DNA of 64,000 nt, taken from Gekko japonicus (Eukaryota). The notes below the pieces were generated by a model. The model was not told where the DNA came from and did not search any database. It saw nothing but the letters and a program-made list of their open reading frames with translations. The translations under genes and the position numbers were made by a program. Location: assembly GCF_001447785.1 (NCBI RefSeq), contig NW_015174905.1:186001-250000 (forward strand), in the 5' to 3' direction. This document shows, piece by piece, positions 14,570 to 54,310 of the stretch (its first letter is position 1; every line of letters begins with the position of its first letter).

Positions 14570-14667
14570 CATTGTGAGCAAGGATTCTGCTCTCAGTTAA
14601 AATCTGTGAGCTGGAGGCTAAAAAACTGTGAGCTAGCTCACACTAACTCAGCTTAGAGGGAACACTG
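14570..14667. mobile_element. Partial hAT MITE (cagtgttccctctaagc family)
   Basis: gtgagctagctcacactaactcagcttagagggaacactg terminus, identical to that of 18745-18950. Confidence 0.75.
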
Positions 14668-17176: not shown

Positions 17177-18744
17177 CACTTAAGCTTTAGAAAGAAGTAA
17201 TATCTTAGCATTTTCCCTTAAGAGTTTCCTAGTTCAAGGTGATCTAATTTGAACAATGAAGTTTCCCACCACAAATTGCAGCTCAGTAAGATAATTGCTT
17301 CTAAGGTGTCCAGAGACCTTTCTTCACTTTCCTTATCTGGCAATATTTCTAGTACCCCACAAACTCCTTCCTCCTCACCTTCATGCAATTGAAGAGCATA
17401 CCTTTACCTCACCTGGATTCTCTCTCCCCTTCTTCAAGCTCAAGAAAAAAAAGTCTTGTTTTCATTGAAAGTTTCTGGCCTTAAGGACAAACTGAGTTTT
17501 TACCTGGCATGGCTAGAAAGTCCCATTTCTGAAACACGTTGCATGCCTTCTGGCCTCTCCCTTACCCTCTTGATTTATGCTTAGGTCACTAATTTAGATT
17601 ATTGGCTATCACTATGTCTATTGCACCTGCCAGCAGGATCAGTGCCTGGAATCTACTCAGATAGCTATAAACACTGTAGGGTTGCCAACCTCTTGGTGGG
17701 GCCTGGAGATCTCTCCAGACAATAGAGTTCAGTTTGCCTGGATAAAATGGCTGTTTTGGAGGATGGACTGTATGGAATTATATCCCACTGATGTCCCCCC
17801 CCTTCCCCAAACTCCACCCTCCCCAGATTCCACCAGGCAAATCTCAACCCTACTTCTTATTCTCTCTTTTAGCCTCTTGTCTCTCCCTCCACAAATGACA
17901 CACATTGTAAAATGTGTGGGCGGTAAGAATATTTGCATTTTAACATGGGCGTTGTAGTGTTTGCCATGGTTGATCTATAACTGATATTATCATGACAGCA
18001 GAATGTCCTAATTATTCCCGTCAGTAAAATTATCTTTCATTGGGAGCCTTGTCACCTTGTCAAACAATCCCTTGACTGCTGAGTCTGTTGACCAGTTGGG
18101 TAAAACCCAAGACAGTAGCTCCTCAGTAGGAGGTGATGGAAGGGAGGTTTTTTCCACTGCGTTCAGGCTACCTTATCGTGAGATTTGGGGCTGAATTTGA
18201 AAATGGGCTCTGTGACACGCAGGATATTCAGTGCCACCACCTGCAGTTTCTTTTTTCTTTAGCCTGAAATACCTTCAAGTATAGAGCATTAGTGTTAAAG
18301 CACGTTAACTGACATTACCAAGCACTAGTTGTAGGGGCTGATTCAGGTAAAGATTTATTGTTGATCTTTACAAAAGGGAACACATTTCAAGAAAGCAAGT
18401 GGGGATGCTGACAAGTCATATCTAGGCATCAGTTGAGAAAATGACAAAAATCATCACTACAGTCTATCAGTTGGTCCAGTGTAAAAATCTCCCTATTGGT
18501 CCCAGCAGCAGCTTGGGCACTTTAAGCTGCAGCTAGACAAACACTTGTCAGGGACGCTCTCTAGGCTGATCCTGCACTAAGCAGGGGGTCAGATTAGGTG
18601 GCCTGTATGGCCCCTTCCAACTCAGTGATTCTTTGATTCTAGCCTCGATAAAAAAAGGTTTCTTCCCAATTTTTAAAGTCTGGCTTGGTCCATAATGTTA
18701 ATTTGGCATGTGAAAATAAATCAAATTCTCATGACAGTGTGGAC

Positions 18745-18950
18745 CAATGCTCCCTCTAAGCTGTGGAGTCCTGTGAGCAAAAACTCTACTTTGGGAGCTT
18801 CTGGCATTAAAGTTGCGAGCGAACAATTTGGCTACTGCATGAATTAGTTTGCTCTGGAGCCATCCTTCCGGAACTGAGACAAAAATGTCTGAGCCGGTGG
18901 CTAAAAAACTGTGAGCTAGCTCACACTAACTCAGCTTAGAGGGAACACTG
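18745..18950. mobile_element. hAT MITE with 8-bp TSD
   Basis: TIRs caatgctccctctaagc / gcttagagggaacactg; TSD gtgtggac. Confidence 0.9.
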
Positions 18951-20049
18951 GTGTGGACCACTGTTCTCTAACTGCAGAAATTGCAGAAGGAATGGGATCC
19001 ATTCTAACATAAGTGGACCTTAATGCATTCCACTTAGGGAGGGGCCCCAGACAGGAAGTCTCCAAAAGAGCCTAAGTCCAACTGCCAGGAGAGAACTTGT
19101 AATTAGTACAAGTTAACAGATAAACCTGATCATATTAACTAAGATCAAATAAACCAAATCTTCCTTCATTGGATGGGTGCTACATCCTCTTTAAAGAAAT
19201 CCAAGGTGGTAAAGAACCCCACATAAGTTTGATTTTGTGCGTCTCATGGCAACCCAAAATATTATCCAAATGCTGCAAGGATCTTTGCCATTGTCTGCAC
19301 ATGTGCAGTTATCTCTAGTAACCTAGGAAGAGCTACCCCCAATTTTTTTTTTTTTTTTAAAAGATTTTACCACAAATCTGGGGGCTGATCCAGGTTTGCA
19401 GAACCCTAAGTGAGAGCTATGTCTGACCCTGTCATTAAGATTTTCTTAGCCATACAGGGGTCAGCCCTTCGTTATTAGATCTACAGGTAAGTATAGGATG
19501 AATTCAGTTCAGGTTTTGATTAACTTGTATCTAATAGCTGTTGCTTCTTGCATTAATGATATTTAAATAATTAATGGACATTTGTGCTGCATGCTATGGT
19601 TATATATGTGTTTTTTCCTTGTAGCTGCTGTTTAATATATTCCTGTTTGGAAGCTTAAAAATGCTAATGACAATGGCTGCAAAGTAAACTGTCAATCCTA
19701 CAATCTTTTAAGGCATCAATCTCTTCACATCTACTTTTGGAACATCTTACATGCAAAAGTTATGCACGGTTAATTGGCACAAAATGTTTTTCTTCTCATC
19801 TTTCATAATAATAACTCTATGACAATTTCCTTCATAATATGGTAAAAACAGGAAATATCCCTCAAAAGAGATATGAGCACACTGTCATTCACAGTGACCC
19901 TGCCAGTTCATTTGGAATTGAATTAGCAGCACAGAAATGGCCCTAGTGATAATTGCCGGTGACAAGTGCTGAATGCTCTAGAGGGTGACAAGTGTGGGCA
20001 ACCCTCAACAACTCTGCTAGTCTCATTTTGGATAGAACACCCAAGCACA

Positions 20050-34463: not shown

Positions 34464-34642
34464 CAGTGTTCCCTCTAAGTGCAAGCTAGCTAACAGGTTT
34501 TTTTGCCTCTGGCTCATACATTTTTGTCTTACTTCGGGAAAGATGCCTCCAGAGCAAACGAATTTATGCAGTAGCCAAATCGCTCGCTCACAACTTGAAT
34601 GCCAGTCGCTCACAAAGCAGAACTTTTGCTCACAAGACTCCG
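34464..34642. mobile_element. hAT MITE (cagtgttccctctaag family), truncated by gap
   Basis: Same TIR and body as 43671-43875. Confidence 0.8.
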
Positions 34643-41262: not shown

Positions 41263-41527
41263 CTGAAAGAGAGGGACAGTTTCAGGAAGCCAGTCGCCAC
41301 TTGTACAGGACTAGTTTACCGCCACCGCCGCCACCACCACCAAAACAGAATATGCTGCACTGAGATGTTTAAAAGAAAATACAAGTTTGACACAGGCAAA
41401 ATAACAAAACGTAGCATGAGACGGAGGACCCAGAGTTCATTAAGAATCTATGGAACCATGTGGCAGGATGGGTTTTTCTACGCTGCAAAAGTGAAGCGCG
41501 AGATCTCACAAGCCTTCCCAATACTCA

Positions 41528-41632
<105 letters not shown>

Positions 41633-41866
41633 CTACCAAAATAAATAGAACCAACCGTTATTAACTCTTTCAGGGCTTTGCCAGAAAGACACCAAATATT
41701 GAAGGGGGGACACCCACAGAGTTTAAAGATTATGCATGAAAAAACTGAAGGGAATTCCATCCCACATGAAAAACATGTGCAAAAAAGTGGTTTAATGCTA
41801 ACACTCTTTGAAGAGCTAGAATGCACACTGCAATTAATGTTTAAAGAAAAATTCACCTCTATATAA

Positions 41867-42142
41867 AGAAGAAGAAGAAGAGATTGGATTTATGCCCCGC
41901 CATTCACTATCCCGAAGGAGTCTCAGAGTGGCTTACAATCTCCTTTCCCTTCCCCCTCCCCACAACAGACACCCTGTGAGGTGGGTGGGGCTGAGAGAGC
42001 TCTCTCGAGAACTGCCCTTGAGAGAACAGCTCTGAGAGAACTTGTGACTGACCCACGGTCACACCAGCAGCTGCACGTGGAGTAGTGGGAAATCAAACCT
42101 GGTTCTCCCAGATCAGAGTTCGTGCTCTTAACCACTACACCA
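41867..42142 (-). mobile_element. Squam3-type SINE
   Basis: (aag)n tail, ggattt..gccccgcc..tcact, head ttaaccactacacca. Confidence 0.88.
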
Positions 42143-42364
42143 CATGCACATTTCTTAATGGTTTACTGACCTGACTGAAGTCCAGTTTGCACATTACTTT
42201 TGTAACAAAGTCGCTATTACAAAATTTTCCCTATGGTTGGCTGGAGGGTGCATCACACAAGTCACCTGGATTTCAGAGGTGCTTCCCACACATGCAGCAG
42301 ATAGAACTGTGGTGCTAGCATGGGAAGTACCTATGGGACCATGGCAAAATACCTGTCATTTTTG

Positions 42365-42590
42365 TGTAGTGTGGTGTAGTGGTTAGAGTGTTGGACTAGA
42401 ATCTGGGAGACCCAGGTTCAAATCCTCACCCTGCCAGGGAAGCTGGCTCGGTGACCTTGGGCCTGTCACAAGCTCTTAACCTAGCCTGCCTCACAGGATT
42501 ATTGTGAGGCTCAAACAGAGAGGAGAACTACGTAGGCTGCTTTGGGGTCCTCACTGGGGAGAAAAGTGGGTATAAATTAAGTAGATCAAT
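42365..42590 (+). mobile_element. tRNA-derived SINE (Squam3/MIR-like)
   Basis: ggtgtagtggttagagtgttggactag...ggttcaaatcc. Confidence 0.7.
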
Positions 42591-43213
42591 ATCATCTTGG
42601 GGGTTGACCATGGAAAAGTAGTTTTGTGGTGGCTACCATACTATAAGGATAAAACACAAAGTACTCACACTAATCAGCCGCCATATGTCAAACAAACCCC
42701 TTTTTTTGTTGTAGTTTAGGAAAACATATATACTTAATGAAAACACATAAGTGCACCAAGGGTTTTAGCAAAGTTCACTGGAGTTATTTATTCCTTATCT
42801 TTTTAATCAATCTCTGTACAAGATTTTTTAATCAATCCTCCACTGCTCTTTTGAAATACTAGTTTTTAATACACTATATGAAACATTGTTAAGGCATTGC
42901 AGGATGTCACATTTATGTTTATTTTAGCTACACAAGCTTATCTGAATAATTCCCCAATAAACCAGGAAAAGCCATTATTTTGGGGGGATTCATCAGTATG
43001 GGCTCTTGCAGGACCAGCTGCCAGTCTTACAAATCAAGCCCCCCCCACATCTCCCCACCCATACACAGTTACAAATGGCCTTTCTCGCCTTTTAGCCTCA
43101 TCAGTGAAAGCAGATCTAAAAGGAACAGGAAAGTGGAGCTGGTCTGCTTGATCCAGAAACTCTGGCAAGGGCCCCTGGGCCAACAGGGAAGAATGCCTGG
43201 AGCAGAGCCAATC

Positions 43214-43328
43214 ATGTTCGGTAAGAAAGCTTTAATTTACCCGAATTAGTGAAGAGGAGAGTTTGGAGCAAAAGAAATCTCAGCTTGCTTTAAAAAGGAC
43301 AAAGCATTCCTCTTGTGCTCCCCAATGC
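43214..43328 (+). repeat. Inverted copy of FAM149A intron 6 acceptor plus 5' part of exon 7 (partner 44858-44977)
   Basis: 115 nt align to the reverse complement of 44858-44977 with one 5-nt gap; includes a perfect 33-mer, gagagtttggagcaaaagaaatctcagcttgct (43257-43289). Confidence 0.95.
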
Positions 43329-43670
43329 TTTGAGAAGAACAAAAATCCTCTCGTGTGTGTTTTTGTCTTTTAACTTTCACCAGGTTTTTGTCCCACTGGG
43401 AAGTAACAAATCAACCCAATGTCTCAAGGTAGGGGAAACCTCTGCCACGCTATCGACCTTGGCTGAAGTCGTACTGCGCCAAGCCAACCACTGACACCAG
43501 TCCTGGACTTTGGACTAGCTATGAGCTTGCTAAACCATTGTGTGCACGCACGTATAAAACATTAAGCTCACTTAATATAGAGAATATTACGTAATTTTGC
43601 TGTTCTGTCGGAGAAAAGGCTAAGCAGAACCAGACTTTTGTTTGCCCTGTGTATATATGTCTGTGTGCAT

Positions 43671-43875
43671 CAATGTTCCCTCTAAGCTGAGTTAGTGTGA
43701 GCTAGCTCACATTTTTTTAGCCTCCAGCTCACAATTTTTTTCTTAGCTCAGGCAGGATGGTTCCAGAGCAGACTAACTTATGCAGCAGCCAAATCGTTTG
43801 CTCACAACTTTAATGCCAGTGGCTCCCATAGTAGAATTTTTGCTCACAAGACTCCACAGATTAGAGGGAACATTG
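43671..43875. mobile_element. hAT MITE with 8-bp TSD
   Basis: TIRs caatgttccctctaa / ttagagggaacattg; TSD gtgtgcat. Confidence 0.9.
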
Positions 43876-44178
43876 GTGTGCATATAATGTAAACACTGTG
43901 TACATACATCTTATTAAAAAAAAAGTTTGTTGGCCTATCTGCAAGCCTAAATCCTGAAAACAGAAGGCCAGCTGAGAACCCAGACAACTGCTTTATATCT
44001 CACACAGGTACCTAAGCAGAAAGAAGAGGGGTGAATGGAAGCTTGCAAGAAAGAGACACTGTGGCTGGCAGCTCACGAAGACAGGGGGGATATGAGGGAC
44101 CTAGGGCCAGAAGAGGCTGGTGAGAAAAGCTGAATTTCAACTCCTGGACTACCAGGACCCTAGCCAGAATTTATTTAC

Positions 44179-44333
44179 CTGTGATGGGACAAAGTGTAAG
44201 CCAAAAGATGCTACTCGAGCCTCTGACCCTCTTGATGGAGGTACACTTGATGCATCTACTGTAACACGAGGAACAGGCAGATGTGGCAATTTATTCCCAA
44301 TAGCTTTCAGTTTCTCCATCTGTTTGTCATTCT
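44179..44333 (-). CDS. FAM149A: FAM149A exon 8
   Basis: tag|(E)NDKQMEKLKAIGNKLPHLPVPRVTVDASSVPPSRGSEARVASFGLHFVPSQ|gtaaat; 155 nt. Confidence 0.9.
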
Positions 44334-44750
44334 CTAGACCATCATTGAAAAAAAACTGAATCAAATATATATACAAACTAGCAGTAATGTGCAGCATTAC
44401 AGTTATTCACACAGGTCCAATCTAAATACGATGCTGGCTCCTTGCAAAGCAAATCCAGCCTCGGGATTTCATGTTCCCCTCTCTATCCCACCTGCACAGC
44501 GATTTCTCTTTCACATCCCAGTTTTAACCATGATTTTGTGTTGCATATGTACCAATGCAAACCAGGGCTAATGCAAGCCATTGTTCCCAGCATGTTTGCA
44601 CAGGACAACAATACAAAAGCAAGGCCAGAGACTGATATTTTAGCACAGGCTAACTATACATTTCTCAACCACAGAACAGTTTGAATTTCTAGAAATTATT
44701 ACCTTTAAGACTATTTCTAGAAGTGCTTTCCCCAGAAACATTCCAATTAC

Positions 44751-44941
44751 CTGCAACAGCTGATTCCCAGTTCTTTCTTATTAGTTCTTCCAGTACTTCA
44801 ATTACACTCTTCCAGACATGATCAAATATCTCTGCAGTGACAGTATCTTTGATGCAGGCATTGGGGGAAACAGGAGGAATCCCACGCTTAGTCCTCTTCT
44901 GAGCAAGCTGAGATTTCTTTTGCTCCAAACTCTCATCATCA
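44751..44941 (-). CDS. FAM149A: FAM149A exon 7
   Basis: tag|(L)DDESLEQKKSQLAQKRTKRGIPPVSPNACIKDTVTAEIFDHVWKSVIEVLEELIRKNWESAVA|gtaatt; 191 nt. Confidence 0.93.
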
Positions 44942-45095
44942 CTAATTCAAGCAAATTAAAGCTTTATTACCAAACATTACCTGTTCTCTATTAATAAACG
45001 GTCAATTAGCTTATGTTGTCTTACTGGATTTGCCTAAAAGTGACCAACTATTTCATATTTTTAATATGAATTTTTTTAAATTATAAAGAATGTTA

Positions 45096-45516
45096 TCTCT
45101 CCTTATATATAATTGAGTAAGGGAGCGGAGAAAAAATGTGCACCGTCAGCCATTGGCCTGCCAGCTGCCGCTCAAGGCTGCTGGCGTGCCATTGGCTGGG
45201 AGGCGGGAGGACCTCTCCGCTGGTGAGAGGCAAAGTCCTTCAGTGGGGCAAGATTGTGGCCCCGCCAAGCGCGAGGCCTCTTTCTGGCGGCCACACCAGC
45301 CTTCTGTTGCATGGGGCGGACTTTGCCAGCCAGGCTGTAGGCCCTGCATTGGAGGGGACTCCGGCGGCCCCGGCCATGCTCGGGGATGCGGCAGGTGGCC
45401 GCATGCTGCGCCCCGGCCCTGCTTCACCGGGCGGGCCCGGGCCCAGCCCCCTTACCCCAAGCCGACAGCTCTCCCTAGGTCCTGTTGCCTCCTCCTGCAA
45501 CAGGCATTTCCCCTAG
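45096..45516 (+). mobile_element. Non-autonomous Helitron-like element
   Basis: 5' a|TC..tatatataa; 3' hairpin cctgttgc-N8-gcaacagg followed by CTAG|t; no TSD. Confidence 0.65.
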
Positions 45517-45617
45517 TTCTTATTATAAAGAAAACAGCTACTACAGAGAAGCATGACCTTTTTCTAAAGATAGTTTAATCATTTTTATTATACTCTTTTA
45601 AAAAATGGAGTGCTTAC

Positions 45618-45779
45618 AGTTCCTTGTTGTCAAATGCAAGGTACTCTTCGATCTTCCCCTCTGCATCATAGATTTCTTCTTCCAAAAACAAATACACAGA
45701 TGACTCAGCTAAATCAGCGTTGGATGCCCTGTGCACTGGAGAAGCTGCAGGGATCAGTTTGGAGCCCGAAATGCATAAC
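45618..45779 (-). CDS. FAM149A: FAM149A exon 6
   Basis: tag|(E)LCISGSKLIPAASPVHRASNADLAESSVYLFLEEEIYDAEGKIEEYLAFDNKE(L)|gtaagc; 162 nt. Confidence 0.93.
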
Positions 45780-46134
45780 CTAAAGACATTTTCCAGATAC
45801 AAGAAAAAGTGCCATATTGCAACTGAATTAGAAGTTATGTCGCAATTTGTAACCCGAAATGAAGAATGACAAAACATCCTTATGAAGGTGGCCCCTTCTT
45901 AGCCATTAGCGTCCTCTGGGTGGTGAATACCTCCTTTTATCTGCCTCACTTGCCACAGAGAGCTTTTCCAGTAGTTCCAAAACTATGACTCACAATTCTG
46001 CCAGGTCTAAGGAATGGGGGGAAGGGACTTATGTGAAGGGAGCATCACTTTGTGGACTAGTGTCTAAGACAGATGCCCCATGGGCATCAATCCTTGATCC
46101 TCAAAACTCTGCACCTAACATGTTATCTAACCAA

Positions 46135-54135: not shown

Positions 54136-54310
54136 CAGTGTTCCCTCTAAGCTGAGTTTTTTTAGCCTCCAGCTCACACATTTGTCTTAGCTCAGGAAGG
54201 ATGCCTCCACAGCAAACTAATTTATGCAGTAGCCAAATCGTTCATTCACAACTTTAATGCCAGTAGCTCATAAAGTAGAATTCTTGCTCCACAGCTTAGA
54301 GGGAACATTG
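54136..54310. mobile_element. hAT MITE with 8-bp TSD
   Basis: TIRs cagtgttccctctaagc / gcttagagggaacattg; TSD gtgtggag. Confidence 0.9.

What the first reader, a model, noticed from the sequence alone, without database searches (positions are those of the whole stretch)
43214..44977. Intronic inverted copy of a FAM149A splice acceptor and exon: candidate fold-back duplex controlling splicing or A-to-I editing
Seen: 43214-43328 is the reverse complement of 44858-44977, which covers the last 36 nt of intron 6 (including the AG) and the first 84 nt of exon 7. By hand alignment there is a 33-nt perfect core, about 16 substitutions and one 5-nt gap. It is host-gene sequence, not a recognisable transposon, and has no poly(A) or TSD. 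In the minus-strand pre-mRNA the two arms lie ~1.5 kb apart and enclose the rest of exon 7, intron 7 and exon 8. About 7 substitutions (T>C, G>A) would give G-U pairs that keep the helix, including three just upstream of the AG. The exon 7 and 8 acceptors both have poor pyrimidine tracts. Established: exon/downstream-intron duplexes direct ADAR recoding (e.g. GRIA2 Q/R), structures can mask 3' splice sites, and flanking inverted repeats promote back-splicing. Inference: this element could (a) recode the A-rich E-Q-K-K codons or edit the acceptor AG, (b) cause skipping of the 191-nt exon 7, which frameshifts (skipping exons 7-9 together, 450 nt, stays in frame), or (c) favour an exon 8 circle. 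It could also be a neutral template-switch duplication.
Basis: partly seen in the sequence, partly recalled or inferred. Interest (0 to 1): 0.8.

Follow-up and report, generated by a model that had tools for sequence, protein, structure and literature searches.

The report
Backwards exon-edge copy inside FAM149A intron
A 115-base backwards copy of the start of one FAM149A exon really does sit in a downstream intron of this gecko gene. It could pair with the exon's splice site in the RNA, but so far it looks like an old, drifting replication or repair scar, not a proven regulator.

Summary
43214-43328 (+) is the reverse complement of 44858-44977. That stretch is the last 36 nt of intron 6 plus the first 84 nt of FAM149A exon 7 on the minus strand. 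The arms differ by 16 substitutions and one 5-nt gap, share a 33-nt perfect core, and end sharply.

Independent DNA runs from three related organisms carry the copy with both junctions at single-copy depth. It is therefore neither an assembly error nor a transposon, and it predates their roughly 7% divergence.

In silico the arms form a 105-bp duplex (-158.6 kcal/mol). The acceptor AG is paired with probability about 1.

Nothing shows that the duplex is used:
- At least 8 of the 11 exon-side differences, plus a frame-breaking deletion, are decay of the copy.
- Recent divergence in the copy (2/115) is not lower than in the flanking intron (about 10/934).
- The perfect core is already broken in one relative.
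- G-U-compatible changes are not enriched (7 of 10 transitions, p about 0.17).
- The one RNA run laid was too thin (0-24x on exons, zero on unique intron) to test editing or junctions.

Best reading: a neutral, template-switch-type inverted duplication with latent dsRNA potential.

The parts
43214..43328 (+). Inverted copy (115 nt) of the intron 6 end plus the exon 7 start. It reads in sense on the + strand, so it is antisense within the minus-strand FAM149A pre-mRNA, and it lies in intron 8. It is a pseudo-exon: a 5-nt deletion after 43305 breaks the frame.
   Evidence: present in independent DNA runs of three organisms
44858..44977 (-). Parent arm: the last 36 nt of intron 6 (44977-44942, including the acceptor AG at 44943-44942) and the first 84 nt of exon 7 (44941-44858).
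43257..43289 (+). 33-nt perfect core of the copy, complementary to 44902-44934. Logan contigs of X1 and X3 break exactly here (43286/43260 and 44931), as expected for a 31-mer graph branching at a shared core.
44751..44941 (-). FAM149A exon 7 (191 nt).
44179..44333 (-). FAM149A exon 8 (155 nt), enclosed between the arms.
45618..45779 (-). FAM149A exon 6 (162 nt).
41529..41632 (-). FAM149A exon 9 (104 nt). Intron 8 runs 44178-41633.
43657..43875 (.). Young high-copy MITE-like insertion in the loop between the arms. It is absent from the contigs of organisms B and C.
43208..43212 (+). CCAAT at the end of the left flank, repeated at 43322-43326 at the 3' end of the insert. This is possible microhomology for the return template switch (suggestive only).
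   Evidence: junction print-out

Best explanation
A roughly 120-nt piece of the FAM149A gene, spanning the intron 6/exon 7 boundary, was copied once, in reverse-complement orientation, into intron 8 about 1.5 kb away. The likely cause is a replication template switch or a templated (filler) insertion during break repair. This happened before the divergence of at least three related gecko taxa. Since then the copy has drifted like ordinary intron sequence, while the parent exon stayed under coding constraint. As a by-product, the pre-mRNA contains two arms that can form a roughly 105-bp imperfect duplex covering the exon 7 acceptor. Inferred, not shown: whenever intron 6 is not yet spliced when the distal arm emerges, this duplex would be a promiscuous ADAR substrate and could slightly slow use of the acceptor. 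No adaptive function is implied.
For: - Sharp-edged reverse-complement copy with random flanks, no poly(A) and no TSD.
- Single-copy depth for the copy and its flanks in three DNA runs, so it is not a dispersed repeat (table 2).
- Contigs of X1 bridge both junctions: records 2 and 3 across 43214 and 43328. Contigs of X3 (about 7% diverged) and X9 (about 7%) cover the copy too. The event is therefore real and older than their split (table 8).
- Polarity: at 8-9 of the 11 exon-part differences the parent keeps the residue conserved in FAM149A of other vertebrates (DD, Q, PP, S). The copy is the side that changed, including a CAG>TTA triplet change and a frame-breaking 5-nt deletion.
- Window versus X1: 2 differences in the 115-nt copy against about 10 listed in 934 nt of unique flank, so the copy is not evolving more slowly (table 3).
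- The X9 contigs run through both cores without the branch seen in X1 and X3. This implies the 33-nt perfect core is already interrupted in organism C.
- G-U-compatible changes are 7 of 10 transitions (binomial p about 0.17, my calculation).
- CCAAT microhomology sits where a return switch is expected.
- Template switching is a documented source of new inverted repeats and RNA hairpins (PMC5453318, PMC8794818).
Against: - No outgroup lacking the insertion was available, so the age, and therefore the absolute decay rate, is not calibrated.
- The event (120 nt copied over 1.5 kb) is larger and longer-range than the short template switches catalogued in PMC5453318.
- The microhomology is only 5 nt and was noticed post hoc.
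- Counts are small (2 vs about 10 substitutions).
- The difference table is truncated, so B- and C-specific changes inside the copy could not be counted.
- RNA evidence is absent, not negative.
Confidence: 0.7

Rival explanations
1. The arm is a functional long-range RNA element. By pairing with the exon 7 acceptor it tunes exon 7 inclusion (skipping shifts the frame, giving down-regulation by NMD), or directs ADAR editing or recoding of the first 28 codons of exon 7, or promotes an exon 8 circle.
For: - Predicted duplex of -158.6 kcal/mol.
- 105 arm-arm pairs in the MFE structure of a 1964-nt context.
- P(paired) about 1.0 for the AG, and about 87 kcal/mol lost when the distal arm is shuffled.
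- The acceptor has a weak pyrimidine tract.
- The copy has been retained in three taxa.
- Long-range pairings are known to suppress splice sites, loop out exons and attract editing (PMC8052449, PMC7797038, PMC2724269).
Against: - Retention of an insertion is the neutral expectation.
- The copy's recent divergence is not lower than that of its flanks, and the core is broken in organism C.
- The differences are one-sided decay with no compensatory pairs.
- Conserved complementary regions are depleted around actively used splice sites (PMC8052449), so a helix on a constitutive, frame-critical acceptor is more likely tolerated than selected.
- No RNA evidence was obtained.
Confidence: 0.15
2. The copy is the remnant of a larger inverted segmental duplication, or was carried in by a mobile element (for example a Penelope-like or hAT-type capture), with the rest later deleted or decayed.
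For: Intron 8 is rich in high-copy repeats at 41853-42154, 42306-42607 and 43657-43875.
Against: - The copy ends inside the conserved exon. If more of exon 7 had been copied, it should still be recognisable at about 86% identity, but the next 100 nt are random.
- About 600 nt on the 5' side and 330 nt on the 3' side of the copy are single-copy at 80% likeness.
- The nearest repeat on the 3' side (the MITE) is a later insertion, absent in organisms B and C.
Confidence: 0.08
3. Assembly artefact: a chimeric or fold-back read was incorporated into the assembly.
For: None found.
Against: The arms are 14% diverged. Short-read contigs from three independent studies and organisms contain the copy and bridge its junctions at normal single-copy depth.
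Confidence: 0.01

Closest known systems
Template-switch mutations / templated insertions that create inverted repeats (four-point model, PMC5453318; RNA hairpins and de novo miRNAs from template switching, PMC8794818 and bioRxiv 10.1101/2023.04.19.537475)
   Same: A reverse-complement copy of nearby sequence inserted in one step. It has sharp ends, no TSD or poly(A), possible microhomology at the return point, and it creates a new RNA-level stem.
   Different: The copy is much longer (about 120 nt) and its template is much further away (about 1.5 kb) than the short local events catalogued. The ancestral empty site has not been seen.
Exon / intronic editing-complementary-sequence (ECS) duplexes of ADAR targets (GRIA2-type; the distant intronic element in Gabra-3, PMC3479170; intronic ECSs for coding sites, PMC8897444)
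   Same: An exon pairs with a downstream intronic complementary sequence, and the exon arm is A-rich (23 A in 84 nt).
   Different: Known ECSs are conserved above the intron background and give site-selective editing. Here no editing has been observed, and the arm drifts like its flanks. A helix this long predicts promiscuous rather than site-selective editing.
Conserved long-range pre-mRNA structures that regulate splicing (PCCRs, PMC8052449; ATE1, PMC7797038; Drosophila, PMC2724269)
   Same: Kilobase-range complementarity that overlaps a splice site and loops out an exon.
   Different: Those are short, conserved and often show compensatory changes, and they are depleted at active splice sites. 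This one is long and lineage-restricted, has no covariation evidence, and sits on a constitutive acceptor.
Inverted repeat pairs in introns (IRAlu-type) that drive hyper-editing, exon skipping and circRNA formation
   Same: A duplex of about 100 nt at 86% identity formed by inverted copies in one transcript, enclosing an exon.
   Different: The arms are unique host sequence (one of them an exon and its acceptor), not transposon copies.

Membership tests
Template-switch / templated-insertion inverted duplication | Reverse-complement copy of nearby sequence with abrupt boundaries | tested here: met
   115/120 nt at 86% identity, flanks at 26% identity
Template-switch / templated-insertion inverted duplication | Not a mobile element: single copy, no TSD, no poly(A), no terminal repeats | tested here: met
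   table 2 (depth equal to neighbouring unique sequence in three DNA runs); (junctions)
Template-switch / templated-insertion inverted duplication | Microhomology at switch points | tested here: inconclusive
   CCAAT at 43208-43212 and 43322-43326; only 5 nt, post hoc, and the junctions are old
Template-switch / templated-insertion inverted duplication | Ancestral empty site in an outgroup | not testable with these tools
ORF searches over the copy found nothing.
ADAR exon-ECS duplex | Exon-intron complementarity able to form dsRNA | tested here: met
   (in silico only)
ADAR exon-ECS duplex | A>G RNA-DNA differences at the exon arm | tested here: inconclusive
   only about 1x RNA depth on exon 7 and zero on intron 8; no differences listed
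ADAR exon-ECS duplex | ECS conserved above the intronic background | tested here: not met
   2/115 differences in the copy vs about 10/934 in the flanks between the window and X1; core broken in X9. Small numbers.
Conserved long-range splicing-regulatory RNA structure | Compensatory (double-sided) substitutions that maintain pairing | tested here: not met
   the differences are one-sided changes of the copy. G-U-compatible changes are not enriched (7 of 10 transitions).
Conserved long-range splicing-regulatory RNA structure | Associated alternative splicing of the masked or looped exon | tested here: inconclusive
   the joints table is dominated by repeat-derived joints and exon coverage is too low

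The most novel reading that the evidence does not exclude
A gecko-lineage-specific inverted exon-edge copy has been co-opted as a long-range RNA switch. It pairs with the weak exon 7 acceptor of FAM149A and so sets the ratio of productive to frameshifted (exon 7-skipped) mRNA, or it makes exon 7 a clustered A-to-I recoding target. That would be a caught-in-the-act example of how an ECS or regulatory helix is born from a template-switch mutation.
Probability: 0.1. Interest if true: 0.6.

Novelty: new member of a known kind. Interest (0 to 1): 0.27.

Why it matters
If the duplex were used, it would document the birth of an exon-intron regulatory helix, or of an ADAR editing-complementary sequence, by a single inverted duplication. 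The origin of such elements is rarely observable. As it stands, it is a clean, datable example of a mid-sized (about 120 nt, 1.5 kb range) inverted templated duplication of host sequence in a squamate genome. It is also a reminder that strong predicted pre-mRNA helices over splice sites can persist without evidence of function. FAM149A itself is a poorly characterised gene, so no phenotype can be inferred.

Tried and rejected
- Pfam on the exon 7 peptide alone gave nothing. Gene identity came from the all-library phmmer search plus names and DUF3719 on the full-length hits.
- I searched the protein collection with the two ORFs that cross the copy (45 aa; 89 aa), hoping for ORFs from relatives' contigs. 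No candidates were found. This says nothing about absence.
- I looked for extended homology beyond the arms with permissive scoring and found none.
- I considered CpG decay of the parent intron as the source of two G-U sites. For 43242 this is rejected, because X1, X3 and X9 all carry the parent-like T there, so C is a recent change in the window's lineage.
- The RNA depth dip on exon 7 is not interpreted. It rests on only 2-4 reads, and the tool warns that dips are no finding.
- No N runs were filled.

Full report
**Observation**

The inverted repeat is real and matches the description.
- The repeat finder finds two collinear arm pairs, 43214-43305/44886-44977 and 43306-43328/44858-44880, offset by 5 nt.
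- Local alignment joins them into 115 nt against 120 nt with a single 5-nt gap.
- A position-by-position count gives 16 substitutions: 5 in the 36 intron-derived positions and 11 in the 79 aligned exon-derived positions. Ten are transitions and six are transversions.
- The perfect core is 33 nt, at 43257-43289 / 44902-44934.
- Seven substitutions would leave G-U pairs in the minus-strand RNA, three of them just upstream of the acceptor AG.
- Similarity ends abruptly on both sides. The next 100 nt are 26% identical, which is random.
- In the whole-window list of inverted repeats of 50 nt or more, this pair contains an exon; most of the other long pairs involve elements that recur in the window.

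**Gene context**

- The 62-codon translation of 44940-44753 hits 135 proteins in the all-against-all library.
- The full-length hits are named FAM149A by their sources and carry Pfam DUF3719 in an upstream part.
- tblastn of four of these proteins against the window lays out a minus-strand gene.
- Inspection of splice sites fixes these exons:

| Exon | Coordinates (minus strand) | Length |
|---|---|---|
| 6 | 45779-45618 | 162 nt |
| 7 | 44941-44751 | 191 nt |
| 8 | 44333-44179 | 155 nt |
| 9 | 41632-41529 | 104 nt |

- The copy lies in intron 8, 850 nt after the exon 8 donor and about 1.58 kb before exon 9.
- Exons were translated and searched one by one, by reference. I did not build or search a joined spliced model.
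- On the + strand the copy reads as a sense pseudo-exon with its own AG. The 5-nt deletion breaks the frame.

**Is it real DNA, and how old is it?**

I laid four public runs on 41400-45900. The three DNA runs were:

| Run | Organism | Divergence from the window |
|---|---|---|
| X1 | A | 1-3% |
| X3 | B | 6-7% |
| X9 | C | about 7% |

- All three cover the copy at the same depth as the neighbouring unique intron. The copy and its flanks (42608-43513) are therefore single-copy sequence, not a dispersed repeat.
- X1 contigs bridge both junctions: 42519-43286 and 43260-43696.
- The X1 and X3 contigs end and start at exactly 43286/43260, and at 44931 on the parent side. A 31-mer graph must branch there if the 33-nt core is shared by two inverted arms flanked by the same mismatches.
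- This confirms the inverted repeat independently in organisms A and B. It also shows that the mismatches bounding the core predate the A-B split.
- In X9, single contigs run through both cores, so in organism C the perfect core is shorter than 31 nt. The helix is still eroding.
- An assembly artefact is excluded. The insertion is older than the roughly 7% divergence of these taxa.
- Earlier notes of this scan call the genome a gecko. I did not verify the species.

**Direction and rate of change**

- At the exon-derived positions, the parent keeps residues that are conserved in FAM149A of a coelacanth, sharks, a frog, a bird and other hits, namely DD, Q in LAQKR, PP and S in PPVSPNAC.
- The copy has changed these positions. 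The changes include a three-adjacent-base change (CAG to TTA) and the frameshifting deletion.
- So 8-9 of the 11 exon-side differences are one-sided decay of the copy. None is a paired change.
- Between the window and X1, table 3 lists 2 differences inside the 115-nt copy (43242, 43318). It lists about 10 in the 934 nt of unique flank (42608-43213 and 43329-43656).
- A few unlisted differences could raise either number slightly. Either way the copy is not evolving more slowly than its surroundings.
- G-U-compatible changes make up 7 of 10 transitions. Against an expectation of one half, the one-sided binomial p is about 0.17 (my calculation).
- There is no signal of selection for pairing.

**RNA potential**

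- The two arms alone form a duplex of -158.6 kcal/mol.
- In a 1964-nt minus-strand context, the minimum-energy structure contains 105 arm-arm pairs.
- In the partition function the mean probability of arm-arm pairing is 0.87. The AG and the first exon base are paired with probability of at least 0.999.
- Shuffling the distal arm costs about 87 kcal/mol.
- The thermodynamic premise is sound, but these are equilibrium calculations on naked RNA. Whether the helix forms before intron 6 (676 nt) is removed is a kinetic question that cannot be answered here.

**RNA data**

- The one raw-read RNA run I could lay (X21, about 3% of the run read) shows reads on exons only. From aligned bases, depth is roughly 24x on exon 9, 9x on exon 8, 1x on exon 7 and 2x on exon 6. 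It is zero in every unique intronic bin, including the distal arm.
- The gene is therefore expressed and spliced.
- The coverage cannot reveal editing, alternative junctions or back-splicing.
- The tool warns that dips in depth are no finding.
- The joints table is filled by repeat-derived joints.
- The functional predictions therefore remain untested. They have not been refuted.

**Origin**

- There is no poly(A), no target-site duplication and no terminal repeat.
- No high-copy sequence adjoins the copy.
- The nearest repeat on the 3' side, a MITE-like element at 43657-43875, is absent from organisms B and C. It is therefore a later insertion.
- The copy stops inside a conserved exon, which argues against a larger duplication that decayed.
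- The last bases of the left flank and the last bases of the insert share CCAAT (43208-43212 and 43322-43326). A return template switch would need microhomology at that point, but this is only suggestive.
- Template switching during replication is a documented source of new inverted repeats and RNA hairpins (PMC5453318, PMC8794818). This event is longer and longer-range than the typical catalogued cases.

**Comparison with known systems**

- The layout resembles three known arrangements:
  - exon/ECS duplexes of ADAR targets (PMC3479170, PMC8897444);
  - conserved long-range splicing structures (PMC8052449, PMC7797038, PMC2724269);
  - inverted-repeat pairs that loop out exons.
- It fails or cannot complete the membership tests that involve conservation, covariation or observed RNA effects.
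- PMC8052449 reports that conserved complementary regions are depleted around actively used splice sites. This makes a selected helix on a constitutive, frame-critical acceptor less likely a priori.

**Verdict**

- The best explanation (about 0.7) is an old, neutral, template-switch-type inverted duplication with latent dsRNA potential.
- A functional splicing or editing role keeps about 0.15.
- A remnant of a larger duplication or a TE-mediated origin keeps about 0.08.
- An assembly artefact is about 0.01.

- Two ORF-based searches for relatives found nothing.
- Only one read-laying run was available, and its difference table is truncated.

Noticed in passing
window 43657-43875: A MITE-like element with 22-nt terminal inverted repeats (43668-43689 / 43857-43878). 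Other copies lie in the window at 14587-14667, 18743-18953, 34497-34641 and 54176-54289. It is present in the window and in X1, but contigs of organisms B and C skip it, so it is a young lineage-specific insertion. Summed DNA contig depth is enormous and RNA read depth is about 8000x.
   Followed up: partly
window 41853-42154 and 42306-42607: Two further very high-copy repeats in intron 8. Summed contig depth is 10^5 to 10^7 against about 100 for unique sequence, with thousands of RNA reads on both strands.
   Followed up: no
window 41529-45779 (exons 6-9): In RNA run X21, depth falls steeply from exon 9 (about 24x) through exon 8 (about 9x) to exons 7 and 6 (1-2x). This could be 3' bias, the tool's human-like read filter, or a transcript starting downstream of exon 7. 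There are too few reads to tell.
   Followed up: no
window 43290-43292: Three adjacent bases differ between the copy (TTA) and the parent (CAG). This looks like a multinucleotide mutation in the copy.
   Followed up: no
window vs run X1 (41400-45900): The best DNA holder under the same species label differs from the window by about 1-3% in unique intron sequence, plus several indels (for example 10 nt at 44634 and 5 nt at 44039). That is high for one species, so the window's source may be a divergent population or a sister taxon.
   Followed up: no
proteins P0001 / P0136 (Logan contigs, not fetched): ORFs from a related species read from exon 7 straight into intron 7. They are 86% identical to the window's exon 7, and the intron-derived translation is similar too. 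These are genomic contigs of a more distant gecko that could show whether the arm is older, but the tool to fetch them was closed.
   Followed up: partly
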